Virus record (IMG/VR): IMGVR_UViG_3300004151_000006
Location: 1 to 64,000 of that record
Reading direction: 5' to 3' (one strand)
DNA: 64,000 nucleotides
Both the position numbers and the translations under genes were made by a program. Below are positions 2,720 to 41,650 of the stretch, one piece after another. Below the pieces are notes generated by a model. It was not told the DNA's origin. It made no database searches and saw only the letters and a list, made by a program, of their open reading frames with translations. The stretch's first letter is position 1. Each line of letters starts with the position of its first letter.

Positions 2720-3315
2720 AATTCAAATGGTCATACTTAATACCATTGGTAGTTGTTGGTTTTGTTCTCTTTGTTTTTAGTATGGTCCTTGATCAGCTAT
2801 ACAGTACCACATCCACTAATCACAAACCCATTAGCTTTCAAGCACCACAAGTACAAGAGTATGGAATCAAGCATGAAGAAGAACCACTCCCACCTATCAA
2901 GTATTTTGGATATCTGAAATCAAGTAAGGTCAATGATCTCAATCATCTTTACTTTGAAGTATTTGATCAAGATAAGCATCTATACAAAATAGTCCAACTC
3001 TATGGTATAAAGGTACCCAATGATTCAAATATTAAAAAAGCTATTGACACTGTCATTGGAGTATATGCAGAGAATCAAGTCATCATTGTGTCTAGGACAG
3101 ATCATCCTGATCAACAGTTTGATATTGTCTCAATCAAGATCATCACACCAAACAATATCCTCATAGATTTGGCTGAGCTCCTCACTACAAAAGGCTCCGT
3201 CGATGTCACTGAGGATACCAAACATCAGATGACACATGCCCTCCTTAATAAAGGAAAGTCCTATGCTCAAGAGCACCATTTGGGCATCTGGGCTAATACT
3301 TCCATATCAAAGTAA
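2716..3315 (+). CDS. membrane-anchored thermonuclease (SNase)-like protein, probably degenerate
   Basis: N-terminal TM; VQLYGIKVP, LAELLTTKG, AQEHHLGIWA; no DGDT motif. Confidence 0.55.
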   Translation: MKFKWSYLIPLVVVGFVLFVFSMVLDQLYSTTSTNHKPISFQAPQVQEYGIKHEEEPLPPIKYFGYLKSSKVNDLNHLYFEVFDQDKHLYKIVQLYGIKVPNDSNIKKAIDTVIGVYAENQVIIVSRTDHPDQQFDIVSIKIITPNNILIDLAELLTTKGSVDVTEDTKHQMTHALLNKGKSYAQEHHLGIWANTSISK

Positions 3316-3667
3316 AATCATCATTGCTGGTAGTAGAAGTATCATTGATCCAAATCTAATTTATCCAATCTTAGATGATCATTTTTCATATATAGGTGAA
3401 GTAGTTTGTGGGACAGCTCTTGGTGTAGACACCATTGGTGCTCATTGGGCAATAGATAGACAAGTCAGGATCAGTTGTTTTAAACCTGATTGGCATCCCA
3501 ATGGGCATTATGACAAATCTGCTGGATATAAACGTAATATAGAAATGGGTGAATATGCACATGGACTATTAGCTTTTTGGGATGGTCAATCACGGGGGAC
3601 CAACCACATGATCAATATCATGGATCGGTTGGGTAAACCCTATGTAGTCTATAAACTTGCAGCATGA
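3263..3667 (+). CDS. SLOG family (YspA/DUF2493-like) protein
   Basis: KIIIAGSR, VVCGTALGVD, SAGYKRN, AFWDGQSRGT; ATG 3263 preceded by AAGGA. Confidence 0.85.
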   Translation: MLKSTIWASGLILPYQSKIIIAGSRSIIDPNLIYPILDDHFSYIGEVVCGTALGVDTIGAHWAIDRQVRISCFKPDWHPNGHYDKSAGYKRNIEMGEYAHGLLAFWDGQSRGTNHMINIMDRLGKPYVVYKLAA

Positions 3668-6708: not shown

Positions 6709-8640
6709 CTAACTGGCATTTCCGGATACACTCTTCATATACACACCTCCAGGCACAATGACCTTATCTGTAGCCATCAGCTTGATGATGAGTTCACCCA
6801 CCCTACTTAAGATTTCATGATAAATCAACACAGGTTGAATCACTGGATACCCATATATCAATACATTATCATCCTCTTCAAGCTCAAGATACTCCAGGTA
6901 CATATCTAAGTCGTTCACGACACCTTCAGGTGCCAGAGCGTTGATATACTCCTGGGGATGCTTCGCTGTATTGGGGACTATAATATCATTTGTGTTGTAT
7001 ATATTTTCATCATATAAAGTCTTAATTACATGATTGATAGCTAACCTGAAATTCTCATGGATAAAGAGCATATATTTCTTATCCACTTCAGACATCACAA
7101 AGTTGTCATTTTCAATCTTTTCTTTAACGATCACAAGTACATCATTCATACTGAGTACACCATTAATAAAGAAGTTATTAGTGATAGATGCCATGGTAGC
7201 GCCAATGACATCTCTTACTACATGGTGTGCAGCTACATTGTCATGTGTATTACCACCAAGCTTTAAAGTGGGAAGATGAATACATGTCATATTTTTCATA
7301 GCTAAAGTAGCAATATCATGGACTGATTGATCTTTAGCATGACTAAGATCTGCTTGTTCAGCACGTAATTTCATATCTTCCAATAAGTCATCATAAAATT
7401 TACATTTACCTGGATGTTTAAAATTTGGATGAATGGTAGCTTTAGTAGCATCGTGTTCAAAGAGTCCATAGAATTCCATGACTGATCCATAGGTACGAAT
7501 CTTATTCACCATGAATGTGTAACTATCATCTAAAGGATTTTGTCTCTCAGTCTGAATATATGGAGTAGTGGATGCAATAGCATTAAGCACTGCAAGATCT
7601 ACTGCATACTGGGTAAATGTTTTATTTTTTGTAAAATACGAAGCTAGTGCAATGGGTTCTTTACGAATGGCATTAACCTCACCAACGGTACGTATAATTT
7701 CAGCTGGGATCTGTGCAGCAGTGAGTATACACAATGATTCATTTTCAGGATAAGCTTTGATATATCCAATCAATTTGCTCGTACAAGTATCACCAGTAGC
7801 CATACCATCGGGAATAGCTAACACTCTTACATTTTCTTTTACCCATTCAGTTTGCATGACTTCATTATAAAGATTGGCAGTTTGAAAATCAATATCTACG
7901 ACAAAATCATAAGGTTCTGTATGAACAGAATAATCAGTTTCATCTTCTACTTTTGAACTAAACCAAGTTTGATGTTCCCAAGCTTCTCTGGGGATACCTT
8001 CAAAGATAGTCTTCATACATTTAGATAAGATCAAATGTCCACCAGAAGAAGACATAGATTGCATAAAAGCAATGACACCAGCCCAATATTCTTCAGATTT
8101 ACCAGGATAAAGACTCATGAGTCTTTCAATAGAATAAGATTCATTATCGATAGTCTCCAACACAATCTTTACAAATTCTTTATAGAGTTTATTTTGATCT
8201 ACTGTAGTGAGTTTGAGTGCAGCGATCTTATCTTTGTTTTGTAATGCATTCTTAAGAAAGATAGCGGCTACTAGCATGGCAGTAGTGGTGCCATCTTTAG
8301 CTCTACGATCCACTTCTCTACCAATATAAGTGATGACATTTTTAAGATATGTTTGAATGATAGATGCAAACTCTACTTTTTCCAATATAGTAATACCATC
8401 TTTAGAGAATGTGGAAGGTGAAGCCAATGCAGCATTACCACTAGCGATTACATTCCGATCTACGATCATAGAAAATTGACTATGTGGACCACAATGTGGT
8501 GTGAGTAATTGATCAATATATTCCAGGGTATCTGTAAAGATCTGTTTGTTTTCTTCAAGTTTCATATCCACAACATTTTGCATATGCAAATGTGTGTTGA
8601 TGACGTTTTTACCAACGTGACCGTTGCCTGGATTGTTCAT
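6709..8640 (-). CDS. groEL: divergent GroEL-like chaperonin
   Basis: HCGP (TLGP), SKDGITIL (TKDGVTV), KDGTTTA (GDGTTTA), LKLGG...VRDVIGATMAS, VIQPV...KLMATDKVIV. Confidence 0.8.
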   Translation of the reverse strand: MNNPGNGHVGKNVINTHLHMQNVVDMKLEENKQIFTDTLEYIDQLLTPHCGPHSQFSMIVDRNVIASGNAALASPSTFSKDGITILEKVEFASIIQTYLKNVITYIGREVDRRAKDGTTTAMLVAAIFLKNALQNKDKIAALKLTTVDQNKLYKEFVKIVLETIDNESYSIERLMSLYPGKSEEYWAGVIAFMQSMSSSGGHLILSKCMKTIFEGIPREAWEHQTWFSSKVEDETDYSVHTEPYDFVVDIDFQTANLYNEVMQTEWVKENVRVLAIPDGMATGDTCTSKLIGYIKAYPENESLCILTAAQIPAEIIRTVGEVNAIRKEPIALASYFTKNKTFTQYAVDLAVLNAIASTTPYIQTERQNPLDDSYTFMVNKIRTYGSVMEFYGLFEHDATKATIHPNFKHPGKCKFYDDLLEDMKLRAEQADLSHAKDQSVHDIATLAMKNMTCIHLPTLKLGGNTHDNVAAHHVVRDVIGATMASITNNFFINGVLSMNDVLVIVKEKIENDNFVMSEVDKKYMLFIHENFRLAINHVIKTLYDENIYNTNDIIVPNTAKHPQEYINALAPEGVVNDLDMYLEYLELEEDDNVLIYGYPVIQPVLIYHEILSRVGELIIKLMATDKVIVPGGVYMKSVSGNAS

Positions 8641-9109
8641 ATGCTAAACGCTCCCGCGTATTAAATGTGTCTGTGGCATTAGCTGACTTATCCTGTTGTA
8701 TTTGATTTTGGATGTTAGCTATGACTTTTTTACGTGGTTCATCTATCTCAGCATAAACTGATTTCAATATATCATATAAAGCAAAATCCATCTCTAACAC
8801 ATCAGTTACAGATAAACCAGTGAGATTGTGGATATCGGTAGACATAAAGAAACGTAATACATCTTCAAAGATAGGATTACCTATTTCTCGATTATCTTCA
8901 TATTCAATACCTAGAAAGTTTCTACTCGTGATAGGTCTATCTTTATAAAAATTGGGATTAAAGAATTCACTATTGAATTTGGAAATACCCAAACACCGAG
9001 CCTTGCCTGGGTATTTCTTCCAAAATGCTAAAGCCTCTAGATGTGCTTTGGCGTATTCGACTATTTTGTCGTATTTGACTGGTTGGCTGCGGTCAGTCGA
9101 ATAAGACAC
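8609..9109 (-). CDS. probable -1 frameshift extension of the upstream tail/baseplate assembly protein
   Basis: GTG start without RBS; -1 frame relative to 9061..10779; T7 run just upstream; TGLSVTDVLEM motif. Confidence 0.65.
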   Translation of the reverse strand: MSYSTDRSQPVKYDKIVEYAKAHLEALAFWKKYPGKARCLGISKFNSEFFNPNFYKDRPITSRNFLGIEYEDNREIGNPIFEDVLRFFMSTDIHNLTGLSVTDVLEMDFALYDILKSVYAEIDEPRKKVIANIQNQIQQDKSANATDTFNTRERLAYEQSRQRSRW

Positions 9110-10779
9110 ATTGTAAAAAAACTTGACTGCACATCAAACGGGATAAATCCATCCACTGCATTCTTAGGAGCTTTACCACACTTAGGACAACGATCATATT
9201 GATGTACCACATGGGTGATCTTAGTGGCTTTGATATATTCATGGATACCTTCATCTAACTTTACATCTTCCATACTGATGGTATCTAAGATATCACGGAT
9301 ATCCTCTCTAGAGGTATCATCATACGGATCATTTTTCACAGTATAAATAATATTATCTTCACCCTGACCATCGATAGTTTCAATCTCAGAGATACTCTCG
9401 ATCCAAGGAAGCAAAAGCTTATAATAGTTATAACGAAGATATTCAAACACTTCATCTATCTTTGCATTGACAGCATCTTTACCAAGAGTATAGAACATCA
9501 TGTTGTTGTATTCATTGCCATACATGAGATAGAGTTCTGCCGTAGGTACACGATATTTTACTTCCCAATGACTAATGATACCAGTAGCACCATTGTTGAC
9601 AGTGAATCGATATGGTACTACATGCTTACCAATATTACGTTGATAGATGAGTACCTGCTCTGGATCTACTTTACCCTGATTAGTAAGAAAATCAGACATT
9701 TCTTTAGTGATGAGATCATCATTACGTACACAGAGTTTAAGGATATCAGCTTTGACTTCTTCAATATGTTCACATCTGGTGACTTCTTCACCTTCCATAC
9801 CTTCTAATGGTTCAGTACAAATATAACGCACTATGATACCTTCTCTAAACATGAGTGCTGCCAATGTAGCTAAAATAGTATCATAATCATGCATACTGAT
9901 ATATTTAAGAATGTCTGTACCCATCTGTGCAAAATCTTTAAGACTACTATCCTGAATCACCTTCGGTAAGAAATCACTGAGGATCAATTCCTTTACAGCA
10001 ATATCTGCATACAAATAAAAGTATCCACCGATCTCACGAGTAAAATGATACTTATTGTGTTGACACATCCTCACCATACCAGCAATTTCACTTAGAGACA
10101 AAGCTTTCAGTGTAATAAAAAACCCACTATTCATCAAAGGTATACGACACATACCCTGCATCTGTGCAATGACACGAGCACGTGCTTTGAATCCAGAGAG
10201 AACTTTATCTTTAGGAGCAGATGCACGTTTGGTCATACCTTCTTTAAAGATAGGTGCACGACTAAAAATCTCATTAAGGGTCTCAATATCTTTAGCTTGC
10301 TTCTTCATCCATTCCAATGCTTCACGGTTAAATTCCATCTGTTTCTTGTAATACAGAGTAGCATCAAAGAGTACACCATCTTTGTGATTAGGATCGTTTT
10401 TATTTTTATCCCAAGTAGGTTCACCTACACGATTTATTTCTTCATTGATAGCAGATGAATGTACAAATCTATCAGACAATGGGATAGTCAAACTTGTAAA
10501 TTCATTAACTTCATTATTACTTTGATCTTTAGCATCTTCTAATACTGAATTTAAAATATCATCTGTTGGGGTATTGTCTTCCTTAGGTTTATATTCTTCC
10601 AGATTAGCAATATCTTGAGTATGGATACTTTCTTCTTCATCATCACCAGGGATAGGTACACCATAATCAATATCTTGAGGTAATGATCCAGGTCGCAATG
10701 TTCCAGCTTGAGGAAGAGGATATCCATCATCTGAAGGATAAACAATTTCATGTTCTTTGGTATCGTCAATTTCACTCAT
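9061..10779 (-). CDS. tail/baseplate assembly chaperone-like protein with Zn-binding Cys motifs
   Basis: RIPLMNSGFFITL, YICTE...RCEH, CPKCGK, C-terminal IPFDVQSSFFT; AAGGAG RBS. Confidence 0.6.
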   Translation of the reverse strand: MSEIDDTKEHEIVYPSDDGYPLPQAGTLRPGSLPQDIDYGVPIPGDDEEESIHTQDIANLEEYKPKEDNTPTDDILNSVLEDAKDQSNNEVNEFTSLTIPLSDRFVHSSAINEEINRVGEPTWDKNKNDPNHKDGVLFDATLYYKKQMEFNREALEWMKKQAKDIETLNEIFSRAPIFKEGMTKRASAPKDKVLSGFKARARVIAQMQGMCRIPLMNSGFFITLKALSLSEIAGMVRMCQHNKYHFTREIGGYFYLYADIAVKELILSDFLPKVIQDSSLKDFAQMGTDILKYISMHDYDTILATLAALMFREGIIVRYICTEPLEGMEGEEVTRCEHIEEVKADILKLCVRNDDLITKEMSDFLTNQGKVDPEQVLIYQRNIGKHVVPYRFTVNNGATGIISHWEVKYRVPTAELYLMYGNEYNNMMFYTLGKDAVNAKIDEVFEYLRYNYYKLLLPWIESISEIETIDGQGEDNIIYTVKNDPYDDTSREDIRDILDTISMEDVKLDEGIHEYIKATKITHVVHQYDRCPKCGKAPKNAVDGFIPFDVQSSFFTMCLIRLTAANQSNTTK

Positions 10780-41245: not shown

Positions 41246-41650
41246 ATGTACAAAGTGGTGGACTCCAATGGCATTGTGCTTGATTTTGATCTTCCGAACA
41301 AAAAGGAAGCTAAGATTGCCCGTGACAAGTATGATCAGGGCACTGCATTTCTTCAGCGTACGGATAAGCATCCCAGAGGGGCATCGCATCTGCCGCAACC
41401 CAAGAAACCCAAGTTTGGAAAACCCGAAGACCTGGTCACCGACACCCAGACCGAGCCGGTCAAACTCACTGATGAGGAGATCGAGGCTGAGGCCGAACGC
41501 CTTGAAGGCTTCGGCTACAAGACAGCCAATGGCACCGATGGTGTCCCTATCTGGAAACAAAGGGTGGAACGCAAAGTCGATGCTCCTTCGGCTTCGGCTC
41601 AGTTCCAGCCCCGGGTCATTGACTTCAGCGAAGACCCCACTTTCGCGTAG
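41246..41650 (+). CDS. hypothetical protein, GC3-rich
   Basis: AAGGAG before ATG 41246; directly upstream of RNA locus. Confidence 0.75.
   Translation: MYKVVDSNGIVLDFDLPNKKEAKIARDKYDQGTAFLQRTDKHPRGASHLPQPKKPKFGKPEDLVTDTQTEPVKLTDEEIEAEAERLEGFGYKTANGTDGVPIWKQRVERKVDAPSASAQFQPRVIDFSEDPTFA

What the first reader, a model, noticed from the sequence alone, without database searches (positions are those of the whole stretch)
9109..9136. Probable programmed -1 frameshift fusing a tail-assembly-chaperone-like gene to its neighbour
Seen (minus strand): near its end the 572-aa ORF reads AGT TTT TTT ACA ATG, a slippery T TTT TTT at 9121-9115. The next ORF (8609..9109) is exactly in the -1 frame. That frame opens after a TGA at 9136-9134, only four codons before the slip site, and its GTG start has no RBS although most genes here have a strong one. 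Slippage gives ...QSSFF-YNVSYSTDR..., about 723 aa instead of 572 aa. Known: lambda G/GT and P2 E/E' tail chaperones use -1 frameshifts, P2 on a T-run. Inference: a G/GT-type system in a phiKZ-like jumbo phage, where such ORFs are usually annotated as separate genes.
Basis: partly seen in the sequence, partly recalled or inferred. Interest (0 to 1): 0.75.

Follow-up and report, generated by a model that had tools for sequence, protein, structure and literature searches.

The report
Conserved -1 frameshift in jumbo-phage core gene
A run of seven T's near the end of a 572-residue phage gene very probably makes some ribosomes slip back one base and add a 168-residue tail, and the same unannotated signal is kept in all 34 phiKZ-like jumbo-phage lineages examined, but the gene is not a recognisable tail chaperone.

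Summary
On the minus strand, ORF1 (9061..10779, 572 aa) carries an in-phase T TTT TTT at 9121-9115. The next ORF (to 8609) lies in the -1 frame, which opens four codons before the run. Its GTG has no ribosome-binding site. Slippage would give 555 + 168 = 723 aa.

ORF1 is a distant orthologue of phiKZ gp077 / PhiPA3 gp074. The extension is homologous to the small gene downstream of those (PhiPA3 gp073).

In 34 of 34 distinct lineages:
- ORF1 ends 8-44 codons after an in-phase T-run.
- The first Phe codon of the run is TTT in 33 of 33 cases, although TTC dominates elsewhere in many of these genes.
- The -1 frame is open from the run for 151-180 codons. About 1075 codons lie between the junction and the annotated start of the small gene, and none is a stop.

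GenBank annotates two separate genes everywhere, and I found no paper describing this.

The frameshift reading is strongly supported by comparison but unproven at protein level. The "tail-assembly-chaperone" label is not supported: size, gene context and families do not fit, and a homologue is reported as early-expressed. A link to T4 gp26/gp51 hub proteins is only a weak lead. Function is unknown.

The parts
9061..10779 (-). ORF1, 572 aa. It is the 0-frame product and a distant orthologue of phiKZ gp077 / PhiPA3 gp074 / 201phi2-1 gp136 (phrog_4585, function unknown). It carries near-invariant cysteines at C321, C336, C531 and C534.
   Evidence: (E 4.5e-34)
9115..9121 (-). Slippery heptamer T TTT TTT (U UUU UUU in the mRNA), in X XXY YYZ phase with ORF1. 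It encodes the invariant Phe554-Phe555.
   Evidence: An in-phase T-run is kept in 34/34 lineages.
8609..9115 (-). -1-frame extension: 168 codons (YNVSYSTDR...) plus the stop at 8611-8609. It is homologous to the small gene downstream of gp077 orthologues (PhiPA3 gp073; phrog_12109/7580). It is predicted to be helical, with a helix of about 55 residues at the C-terminus.
   Evidence: pLDDT 87.8; hhalign probability 88.6%, E 2.7e-6
9061..9114 (-). 0-frame tail of ORF1 after the slip site: 17 codons (TMCLIRLTAANQSNTTK) plus the stop at 9063-9061. The frameshift product lacks this tail.
   Evidence: the tail is 8-44 aa across lineages
9134..9136 (-). TGA that closes the -1 frame four codons upstream of the run. 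It leaves no room for an upstream independent start of ORF2.
   Evidence: The same TGA is present in the 62%-identical relative L005.
9107..9109 (-). GTG, the only candidate start of ORF2 before its conserved domain that is shared with the nearest relative L005. A TTG near 8987 is CTG in L005. The GTG has no Shine-Dalgarno, so it is probably just an internal Val codon of the trans-frame protein.
   Evidence: dG -0.2 against a median of -7.3
9067..9108 (-). Candidate stimulatory stem-loop beginning 6 nt after the heptamer. Its 5' arm UGUCUUAUUCGACUG pairs with CAGUCAAAUACGACA. It is suggestive only.
   Evidence: -11.5 kcal/mol, z -1.5 here; a hairpin at the same position in 5 relatives, z -1.2 to -3.35; six outer pairs conserved, no two-sided covariation.

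Best explanation
The site is a programmed -1 ribosomal frameshift. Most ribosomes translating ORF1 read through U UUU UUU, add 17 more residues and stop, giving a 572-aa protein.

A fraction slip back one base while the two tRNA-Phe occupy UUU UUU. The P-site tRNA re-pairs on U-UU and the A-site tRNA on U-UU. These ribosomes then continue in the -1 frame for 168 codons. The result is a 723-aa protein with the same first 555 residues and a helical C-terminal module that replaces the short tail.

In this phage the extension probably has no independent initiation, so it would be made only as a fusion and at a ratio fixed by slip efficiency. In this phage's sub-clade a hairpin 5-7 nt downstream may stimulate slipping.

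The arrangement is ancestral to the whole phiKZ gp077 / downstream-small-gene pair of phiKZ-like jumbo phages, where the two parts are annotated as separate genes.

Shown here: the sequence anatomy, its conservation and the statistics. Inferred: that slipping occurs, that it is ribosomal, and the ratio of the two products. Unknown: what the two proteins do. ORF1 is a core protein with conserved Cys/His residues that could bind a metal. It is probably not a tail chaperone.
For: 1. Anatomy: in-phase heptamer, -1 ORF, no SD, and the -1 frame closed just upstream.

2. Nearest relative (62% aa identity, contig L005): same heptamer, phase and TGA. About 110 nt around the site are roughly 95% identical, whereas the flanks are markedly more diverged.

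3. Across 34 of 34 distinct lineages (23 cultured phages of many genera, the window, and 10 metagenomic contigs including L005) there is exactly one T-run of 5 or more in the last 260 nt of ORF1, and it is in phase. The heptamers are T TTT TTT (21), T TTT TTC (9), G TTT TTT (2), A TTT TTT (1) and A CTT TTT (1). The -1 frame is open for 151-180 codons from it.

4. Codon bias (first 28 lineages):
- The P-site Phe codon is TTT in 27/27, although TTT is often the minority Phe codon elsewhere in the same genes (RSL2 0 of 18, L031 0 of 22). The joint probability is about 1e-15.
- The preceding base is T in 25/28 against an expected 0.33 (P 9e-10).
- The A-site tolerates TTC, as tandem slippage predicts. 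The six later lineages agree.

5. Stop-free linker:
- 851 -1-frame codons lie between the junction and the called ORF2 start in 25 lineages, with 0 stops.
- The +1 frame has 73 stops over the same spans.
- The -1-frame stop density inside ORF1 bodies is 0.095, giving P about 1e-37.
- The six later lineages add 224 codons with no stop.

6. ORF2 is in the -1 frame in 34/34, even where 5-218 nt separate the ORF1 stop from the called ORF2 start.

7. The extension is one homologous family.

8. T7 is identical in contigs from three runs.
Against: - There is no protein, ribosome-profiling or reporter evidence. Everything rests on comparison.
- A profile search of 1.84 billion proteins found 36 relatives of ORF2, all called as stand-alone proteins of 84-164 aa. 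No lineage has an in-frame fusion.
- Several lineages have an ATG, and in Miami an annotated RBS, in front of the conserved part of ORF2. Independent translation may therefore coexist with the frameshift there.
- No family-wide stable downstream RNA structure exists (median percentile 0.28). The sub-clade hairpin lacks two-sided covariation.
- Five lineages have weaker heptamers (G/A TTT TTT, A CTT TTT).
- The conserved Phe-Phe is also a protein feature, so part of the run's conservation is at the amino-acid level.
- Lineages are related, so the joint probabilities overstate independence. At 15-25% identity, however, synonymous sites are saturated.
Confidence: 0.8

Rival explanations
1. Transcriptional slippage. 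The phage or host RNA polymerase stutters on the T-run and adds one U to some mRNAs. Normal translation of those mRNAs then gives the same 723-aa fusion.
For: A one-base insertion puts downstream codons in the same -1 frame. All lineages have a homopolymer of 5-8 T. No universal RNA stimulator was found. These phages encode unusual RNA polymerases (annotations).
Against: Runs are short. Ten of 34 lineages have only T5 or T6, and known slippage-prone runs are usually 8-9 or longer (my own knowledge). The run is always positioned as X XXY YYZ with the A-site codon TTY. No RNA data were available; only DNA contigs were found.
Confidence: 0.08
2. These are two ordinary genes. ORF2 is translated on its own, from the GTG or another start, by coupling or re-initiation after ORF1 terminates. 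On this view the T-run is merely the codons of a conserved Phe-Phe.
For: Every GenBank record examined annotates two CDSs. All 36 database relatives of ORF2 are stand-alone calls. Some lineages have ATG starts, one with an annotated RBS. ATGA-type overlaps exist in L031, L032 and L041.
Against: This view does not explain several observations.
- TTT is used at the first Phe in 33/33 lineages against the codon bias, and T precedes it.
- ORF2 is in the -1 frame in 34/34.
- About 1075 linker codons upstream of the called starts contain no stop.
- The only candidate start in this window that is conserved in its nearest relative has no SD, and the frame is closed four codons upstream of the run.
Confidence: 0.08
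3. It is a G/GT-type tail assembly chaperone. ORF1 would bind the tape measure, and the extension would recruit tube protein.
For: - The recoding logic is the same: a -1 shift near the end of the upstream ORF gives a C-terminal extension.
- Three records label orthologues as baseplate proteins: AH06 'baseplate protein' and MJ359 'baseplate hub', and DT01 'putative baseplate hub assembly protein, GP26_BPT4'.
- ESM Atlas neighbours include clusters in which 14-24% of members carry PF12322 (T4_baseplate).
- hhalign against the T4 gp51 family and T4 gp26 gives only 21-28% probability.
- The Atlas hit of the extension to P2 GpE scores 0.83, which is chance level.
Against: - ORF1 is 500-720 aa.
- No tail-chaperone or PF12322 HMM matches it.
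- The gene neighbourhood is not tube/tape-measure.
- No fold match was found.
- The Churi homologue is reported among early-expressed proteins.
Confidence: 0.06
4. It is an artefact: a sequencing or assembly error in a homopolymer, or a decaying gene, splits one 723-aa gene in two.
For: Homopolymers are error-prone.
Against: The sequence is identical in contigs from three runs at 6.6-20.6x depth. The same split is present in 34 independent genomes with different run lengths. No lineage has the in-frame version.
Confidence: 0.01

Closest known systems
Lambda G/GT and P2 E/E+E' tail assembly chaperones (programmed -1 frameshift; P2 on a T-run)
   Same: A -1 slip on a homopolymeric heptamer lies a few codons before the stop of the upstream ORF. 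It yields a short product and a C-terminally extended product, presumably at a fixed ratio. The extension ORF is annotated as a separate small gene. The arrangement is conserved across a large phage group despite very low sequence identity.
   Different: The upstream protein is 500-720 aa rather than about 100-150 aa. No sequence-family match exists. The gene does not lie between tube and tape-measure genes. A homologue is reported as early-expressed. Function is unknown.
E. coli dnaX tau/gamma and IS-element transposase -1 frameshifts
   Same: Tandem slippage of two identical tRNAs occurs on an X XXY YYZ motif. A downstream hairpin at about 6 nt is possible in this sub-clade.
   Different: In dnaX the shift truncates the protein, whereas here it extends it by about 160 aa. 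No upstream SD-like stimulator is seen. The motif is U-rich rather than A AAA AAG.
phiKZ gp077 / PhiPA3 gp074 / 201phi2-1 gp136 family with the downstream small gene (PhiPA3 gp073, 201phi2-1 gp135)
   Same: ORF1 is homologous (phrog_4585, E 4.5e-34). The extension is homologous (hhalign probability 88.6%). The T-run, phase and -1 relation are the same.
   Different: Identity is only about 20%. This phage's clade has a GroEL-like gene immediately downstream instead of the arrangement in cultured phages. In the databases the pair is annotated as two hypothetical proteins with no frameshift.
T4 gp26 / gp51 baseplate hub (assembly) proteins, Pfam PF12322
   Same: Both have a strand motif followed by a Cys pair. 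Each side yields two products from one gene region (T4 gene 26 has an internal product 26'). One orthologue (DT01) was annotated as gp26-like.
   Different: No HMM match exists. Profile-profile probability is only 21-28% over short stretches. The proteins differ two- to three-fold in size. T4 uses internal initiation, not frameshifting.

Membership tests
Programmed -1 ribosomal frameshift site | Slippery heptamer X XXY YYZ in phase with the upstream ORF | tested here: met
   T TTT TTT at 9121-9115 in phase
Programmed -1 ribosomal frameshift site | A long -1 ORF is open across the site, with no plausible independent start | tested here: met
   168 open codons. TGA lies four codons upstream. The GTG has no SD.
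Programmed -1 ribosomal frameshift site | Motif, phase and -1 relation are conserved in orthologues beyond the codon-usage expectation | tested here: met
   34/34 lineages. Joint probability for TTT at the P-site is about 1e-15. Stop-free linker P is about 1e-37.
Programmed -1 ribosomal frameshift site | Stimulatory RNA structure 5-9 nt downstream | tested here: inconclusive
   A hairpin is present in six sub-clade members (z -1.2 to -3.35) without two-sided covariation. None is seen family-wide.
Programmed -1 ribosomal frameshift site | The trans-frame protein is actually made | not testable with these tools
   Only DNA contigs were found. No proteomic data could be searched.
Tail assembly chaperone (lambda G/GT, P2 E/E+E') | -1 frameshift near the end of the upstream ORF giving an extended product | tested here: met
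   As above
Tail assembly chaperone (lambda G/GT, P2 E/E+E') | Small upstream protein (about 100-150 aa) belonging to a tail-chaperone sequence family | tested here: not met
   ORF1 is 572 aa (489-720 aa in orthologues). No tail-chaperone Pfam hit for ORF1 or for the extension.
Tail assembly chaperone (lambda G/GT, P2 E/E+E') | Located between the tail tube and tape-measure genes | tested here: not met
   The neighbours are a GroEL-like gene and unknowns here, with a divergent DNA polymerase nearby in the relative L005. In cultured phages they are a virion RNA polymerase subunit and a helicase.
Tail assembly chaperone (lambda G/GT, P2 E/E+E') | Late expression and a role in tail assembly | not testable with these tools
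   The only pointer is that the Churi gp256 homologue is listed among early-expressed proteins (PMC11849849).
T4 gp26/gp51 baseplate hub family (PF12322) | Match to the family HMM above its cut-off | tested here: not met
   No hit in 19 orthologues, in the window's own genome or in 5 phage genomes. T4 gp26 and gp51 score 216 and 178 bits as positive controls.
T4 gp26/gp51 baseplate hub family (PF12322) | Profile-profile or fold similarity | tested here: inconclusive
   hhalign gives 21-28% probability. There is an ESM Atlas lead. The ORF1 model is too poor to judge (pLDDT 52.6) and gives no PDB match.
phiKZ gp077 family (phrog_4585) | Significant sequence match over the core | tested here: met
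   E 4.5e-34. tblastn hits 51 jumbo-phage records. The PhiPA3 note equates gp074 with phiKZ gp077.
Small gene downstream of gp077 (PhiPA3 gp073; phrog_12109/7580) | Homology of the -1 extension | tested here: met
   hhalign probability 88.6%, E 2.7e-6 over 71 columns. 15 of 17 cultured-phage extensions hit phrog_12109.

The most novel reading that the evidence does not exclude
The gp077/small-gene pair is a single two-product gene across the phiKZ-like jumbo phages examined. Its -1 frameshift is as old and as obligatory as G/GT, but it sits in a different, much larger protein. In the boldest version this protein is a very distant gp26/gp51-type hub-assembly factor. The 'chaperone plus frameshift-extended chaperone' strategy of lambda and P2 would then also operate in phiKZ-type contractile tails. 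The opposite outcome would be equally new: an early or ejected protein whose two isoforms must be made at a fixed ratio.
Probability: 0.15. Interest if true: 0.85.

Novelty: new member of a known kind. Interest (0 to 1): 0.7.

Why it matters
- Programmed -1 frameshifting in tailed phages is textbook for tail chaperones. Here the same device appears in a different gene pair that is widely conserved in phiKZ-like (nucleus-forming) jumbo phages and is annotated everywhere as two hypothetical proteins.
- If confirmed, it corrects the annotation of about 240 phage genomes. In phiKZ-type KTN4, for example, 85 codons of the extension are unannotated.
- It links two 'unknown' conserved genes into one functional unit and implies that a fixed ratio of short to long isoform matters.
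- It gives experimenters a clean genetic handle: synonymous slip-dead alleles and fused-only alleles in phiKZ, PhiPA3, Goslar or SPN3US.
- It is also a well-replicated natural data set on U UUU UUY slippage across hosts with very different GC content.

Tried and rejected
- DNA-level search of the phage collection found nothing.
- IMG/VR pattern scans with ORF1 or ORF2 found no relatives.
- Word-indexed protein searches found only one relative, even with a 19-sequence profile.
ORF1 therefore had to be modelled from 7 sequences and came out poor (pLDDT 52.6).
- Foldseek against the PDB gave no match for ORF1 or for the extension. A profile search of PDB sequences also gave none.
- PF12322 (T4 gp26/gp51) was tested by HMM and by hhalign, including local re-runs on sub-alignments. 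It was not confirmed.
- The ESM Atlas hit of the extension to P2 GpE scored 0.83, which I judged to be chance level.
- Complex prediction of ORF1 with the extension returned 'no answer'. It counts neither for nor against binding.
- Chimallin was not found in the window's own genome by a single-sequence search, which is not conclusive.
- Literature searches found no description of this frameshift: phiKZ/frameshift/gp77, ribosomal frameshift with Chimalliviridae, jumbo phage with slippery, and others.
- The Goslar structure paper and the transposon-mutagenesis (PCH45) paper use their own gene numbers and were irrelevant.
- The two SPN3US papers, the core-genome paper and the antisense-oligomer paper do not mention the gene numbers I searched for. 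For SPN3US those numbers (gp39/gp40) were my own guess at the orthologue's numbering.
- The phage-nucleus interaction paper uses PhiPA3 numbering, in which gp136 is the major capsid protein, so it was irrelevant too.
Full report
**1. The observation**

- ORF1 runs 10779..9061 (572 aa).
- Its last codons read AGT TTT TTT ACA ATG, so T TTT TTT at 9121-9115 is in the X XXY YYZ phase needed for tandem -1 slippage.
- The 166-codon ORF 9109..8609 is in the -1 frame.
- That frame is closed by TGA at 9136-9134, four codons before the run.
- Slipping after Phe555 gives ..QSSFF|YNVSYSTDR.. and 555 + 168 = 723 aa.

The GTG at 9109 has no Shine-Dalgarno. Its anti-SD duplex energy is -0.2 kcal/mol, against a median of -7.3 for 56 gene starts in the window.

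T7 runs as such are common in this 35% GC sequence: 14 in the window. Among 119 in-phase slippery heptamers in long open frames, however, this one is the clear outlier. It has 168 open -1 codons after it (next best 79) and lies 17 codons before the 0-frame stop.

Contigs from three separate freshwater metagenome runs are identical across 8600-9600 with no indel. The T7 is therefore not an assembly error. These runs may include the sample the window itself came from.

**2. What the genes are**

The window is the first 64 kb of a 286,688-bp virus record with terminal repeats.

ORF1 matches phrog_4585 (unknown function, E 4.5e-34). By tblastn it matches single genes in 51 jumbo phages at about 20% identity. 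GenBank notes equate the PhiPA3 hit (gp074) with phiKZ gp077, 201phi2-1 gp136 and EL gp47. With PhiPA3 gp074 as the query, 240 phage records carry an orthologue.

Neither ORF1 nor ORF2 has a Pfam match. The gene downstream of ORF2 is GroEL-like.

**3. Conservation of the frameshift signal**

The only close relative is 62% identical, on a 32.9-kb metagenomic contig. It has the same T TTT TTT, the same phase, the same upstream TGA and a -1 ORF of the same length. About 110 nt around the site are roughly 95% identical, whereas the flanks are markedly more diverged.

I then fetched orthologous loci from 23 cultured phages of many genera. Their hosts are Pseudomonas, Erwinia, Salmonella, Escherichia, Ralstonia, Xanthomonas, Burkholderia, Proteus, Serratia, Klebsiella, Vibrio and Cronobacter. 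GC content of the loci tabulated ranges from 35% to 57%. I also found nine more metagenomic lineages through an HMMER profile search with ORF2.

In all 34 distinct lineages:
- ORF1 has exactly one T-run of 5 or more in its last 260 nt.
- The run is in phase. The heptamers are T TTT TTT (21), T TTT TTC (9), G TTT TTT (2), A TTT TTT (1) and A CTT TTT (1).
- ORF1 ends 8-44 codons later.
- The -1 frame is open from the run for 151-180 codons and contains the annotated small downstream gene.

**4. Statistics**

In the first 28 lineages the P-site Phe codon is TTT in 27 of 27. Yet TTT is often the minority Phe codon elsewhere in the same genes: 0 of 18 in RSL2, 0 of 22 in L031, 2 of 21 in PhiPA3. 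The joint probability is about 1e-15. The base before it is T in 25 of 28, against 0.33 expected (P 9e-10). The A-site codon may be TTT or TTC.

This pattern fits tandem slippage. The third base of the A-site codon plays no part in re-pairing after the shift, whereas the P-site codon must supply a U.

Between the junction and the start codon chosen by the gene callers lie 851 -1-frame codons in 25 lineages, with no stop. The +1 frame has 73 stops over the same spans, and the -1-frame stop density inside ORF1 bodies is 0.095, giving P of about 1e-37. The six later lineages add 224 stop-free codons.

ORF2 is in the -1 frame in 34 of 34 lineages, even where 5-218 nt separate the ORF1 stop from the called ORF2 start. 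The lineages are related, so these probabilities are optimistic. At 15-25% protein identity, though, synonymous sites carry no shared history.

**5. The extension**

The ORF2 profile found 36 relatives among 1.84 billion proteins. All were called as stand-alone proteins of 84-164 aa, and none was an in-frame fusion.

A profile of this clade aligns with a profile of the cultured-phage extensions at 88.6% probability (E 2.7e-6). Those extensions belong to phrog_12109/7580, of unknown function. The window's ORF2 is therefore the counterpart of PhiPA3 gp073 and its relatives.

Its model is confident (pLDDT 87.8). It shows a small helical domain followed by a helix of about 55 residues, with no PDB fold match.

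In KTN4, a phiKZ-species phage, the annotated small gene covers only 80 of the 165 open codons.

**6. Mechanism**

I conclude that ribosomal -1 frameshifting on U UUU UUY gives a short and a long isoform.

A family-wide stimulatory structure is not apparent. In the window's sub-clade all six members can form a hairpin beginning 5-7 nt after the heptamer. The 5' arm is invariant and the 3' arms differ in sequence and position (z -1.2 to -3.35). RNAalifold keeps only six outer pairs, without two-sided covariation, so this is suggestive only.

Transcriptional slippage would give the same protein. I rate it lower because ten lineages have only T5 or T6 and because of the strict phase. No RNA data were available to test it.

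**7. Function, and the tail-chaperone idea**

Nothing supports membership of a tail-chaperone family.
- ORF1 is about four times too large.
- No tail-chaperone Pfam family matches it.
- The neighbourhood is not tube/tape-measure.
- The Churi homologue (gp256 = phiKZ gp077) is listed among early-expressed proteins found by proteomics (PMC11849849). Early detection could also reflect an ejected virion protein.

A weaker lead points to T4 gp26/gp51 (PF12322).
- A few records label orthologues as baseplate or hub proteins.
- ESM Atlas neighbours partly carry PF12322.
- Both T4 proteins are indeed PF12322.
- Against this, the HMM finds nothing in these phages, and hhalign gives only 21-28% probability over short stretches.

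The ORF1 model is poor (pLDDT 52.6) and matches no solved structure. Near-invariant C321, C336, C531 and C534 suggest a metal site. A complex prediction of ORF1 with the extension gave no answer. Function therefore remains unknown.

**8. Novelty**

All GenBank records examined annotate two separate CDSs. The Agricanvirus record I opened (Desertfox) annotates them as overlapping CDSs, and several related records list two features under the match. Seven full-text searches found no description of a frameshift in these genes. The library lacks most subscription journals, so prior mention cannot be excluded.

The mechanism is a known kind. The instance, in a gene pair conserved across the phiKZ-like jumbo phages sampled and outside the tail-chaperone families, appears to be new.

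**9. Verdict**

- The frameshift interpretation is strongly supported by comparative evidence (confidence 0.8) but not shown at protein level.
- The tail-chaperone label is not supported.
- Interest is 0.7.

Noticed in passing
window 6709-8640 (-): A GroEL/Cpn60-like gene (643 aa; phrog_5725, weak PF00118) starts 32 nt inside the end of the -1 extension. The adjacency of extension and GroEL-like gene is kept in the related metagenomic contigs L005, L030-L033, L037 and probably L041. It is absent from the cultured phiKZ-like phages examined.
   Followed up: partly
window 9064-10779 (-), residues C321, C336, C531, C534: Four cysteines are nearly invariant across 12 orthologues at about 20% identity (C..C.H ... 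CPxC). They suggest a zinc or other metal site in the gp077 family.
   Followed up: no
L006 (KTN4, phiKZ species) 3066-3563: The annotated small gene (KTN4_102, 80 aa) covers less than half of the 165-codon open -1 frame. 85 codons upstream of its ATG are stop-free and unannotated. In Desertfox (L002) the annotators instead chose a start 28 codons upstream of the T-run, giving a 136-nt overlap with ORF1.
   Followed up: yes
window 41405-41426 (+): Two in-phase heptamers, A AAC CCA and A AAC CCG, in a long open frame are followed by 74-79 open -1 codons. This is the second-longest such case in the window. They are not classical efficient slip sites.
   Followed up: no
G000 (whole 286,688-bp record): A search with residues 119-602 of PhiPA3 chimallin (gp053) found no match at E <= 0.001. 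The phage may therefore lie outside, or at the edge of, the nucleus-forming family, even though it shares the gp077 / small-gene pair. At the roughly 20% identity seen for ORF1, this single-sequence search is not conclusive.
   Followed up: partly
L036 (T4) 2803-3429 (-): T4 gene 26 is annotated with an internal second product, 26'. T4 gp26 and gp51 both belong to PF12322. This is another two-product arrangement in the family that is a weak candidate relative of ORF1.
   Followed up: no
window 9134-9136 and the equivalent positions in L003, L005, L006, L014, L015, L018: In seven of the first 19 lineages, the -1-frame stop lies just six codons upstream of the junction. Where I read the sequence (the window and L005) it is a TGA created by the TTT GAT codons of the conserved P-F-D motif of ORF1. 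It looks like a by-product of protein conservation, and it also excludes an upstream start for ORF2.
   Followed up: partly
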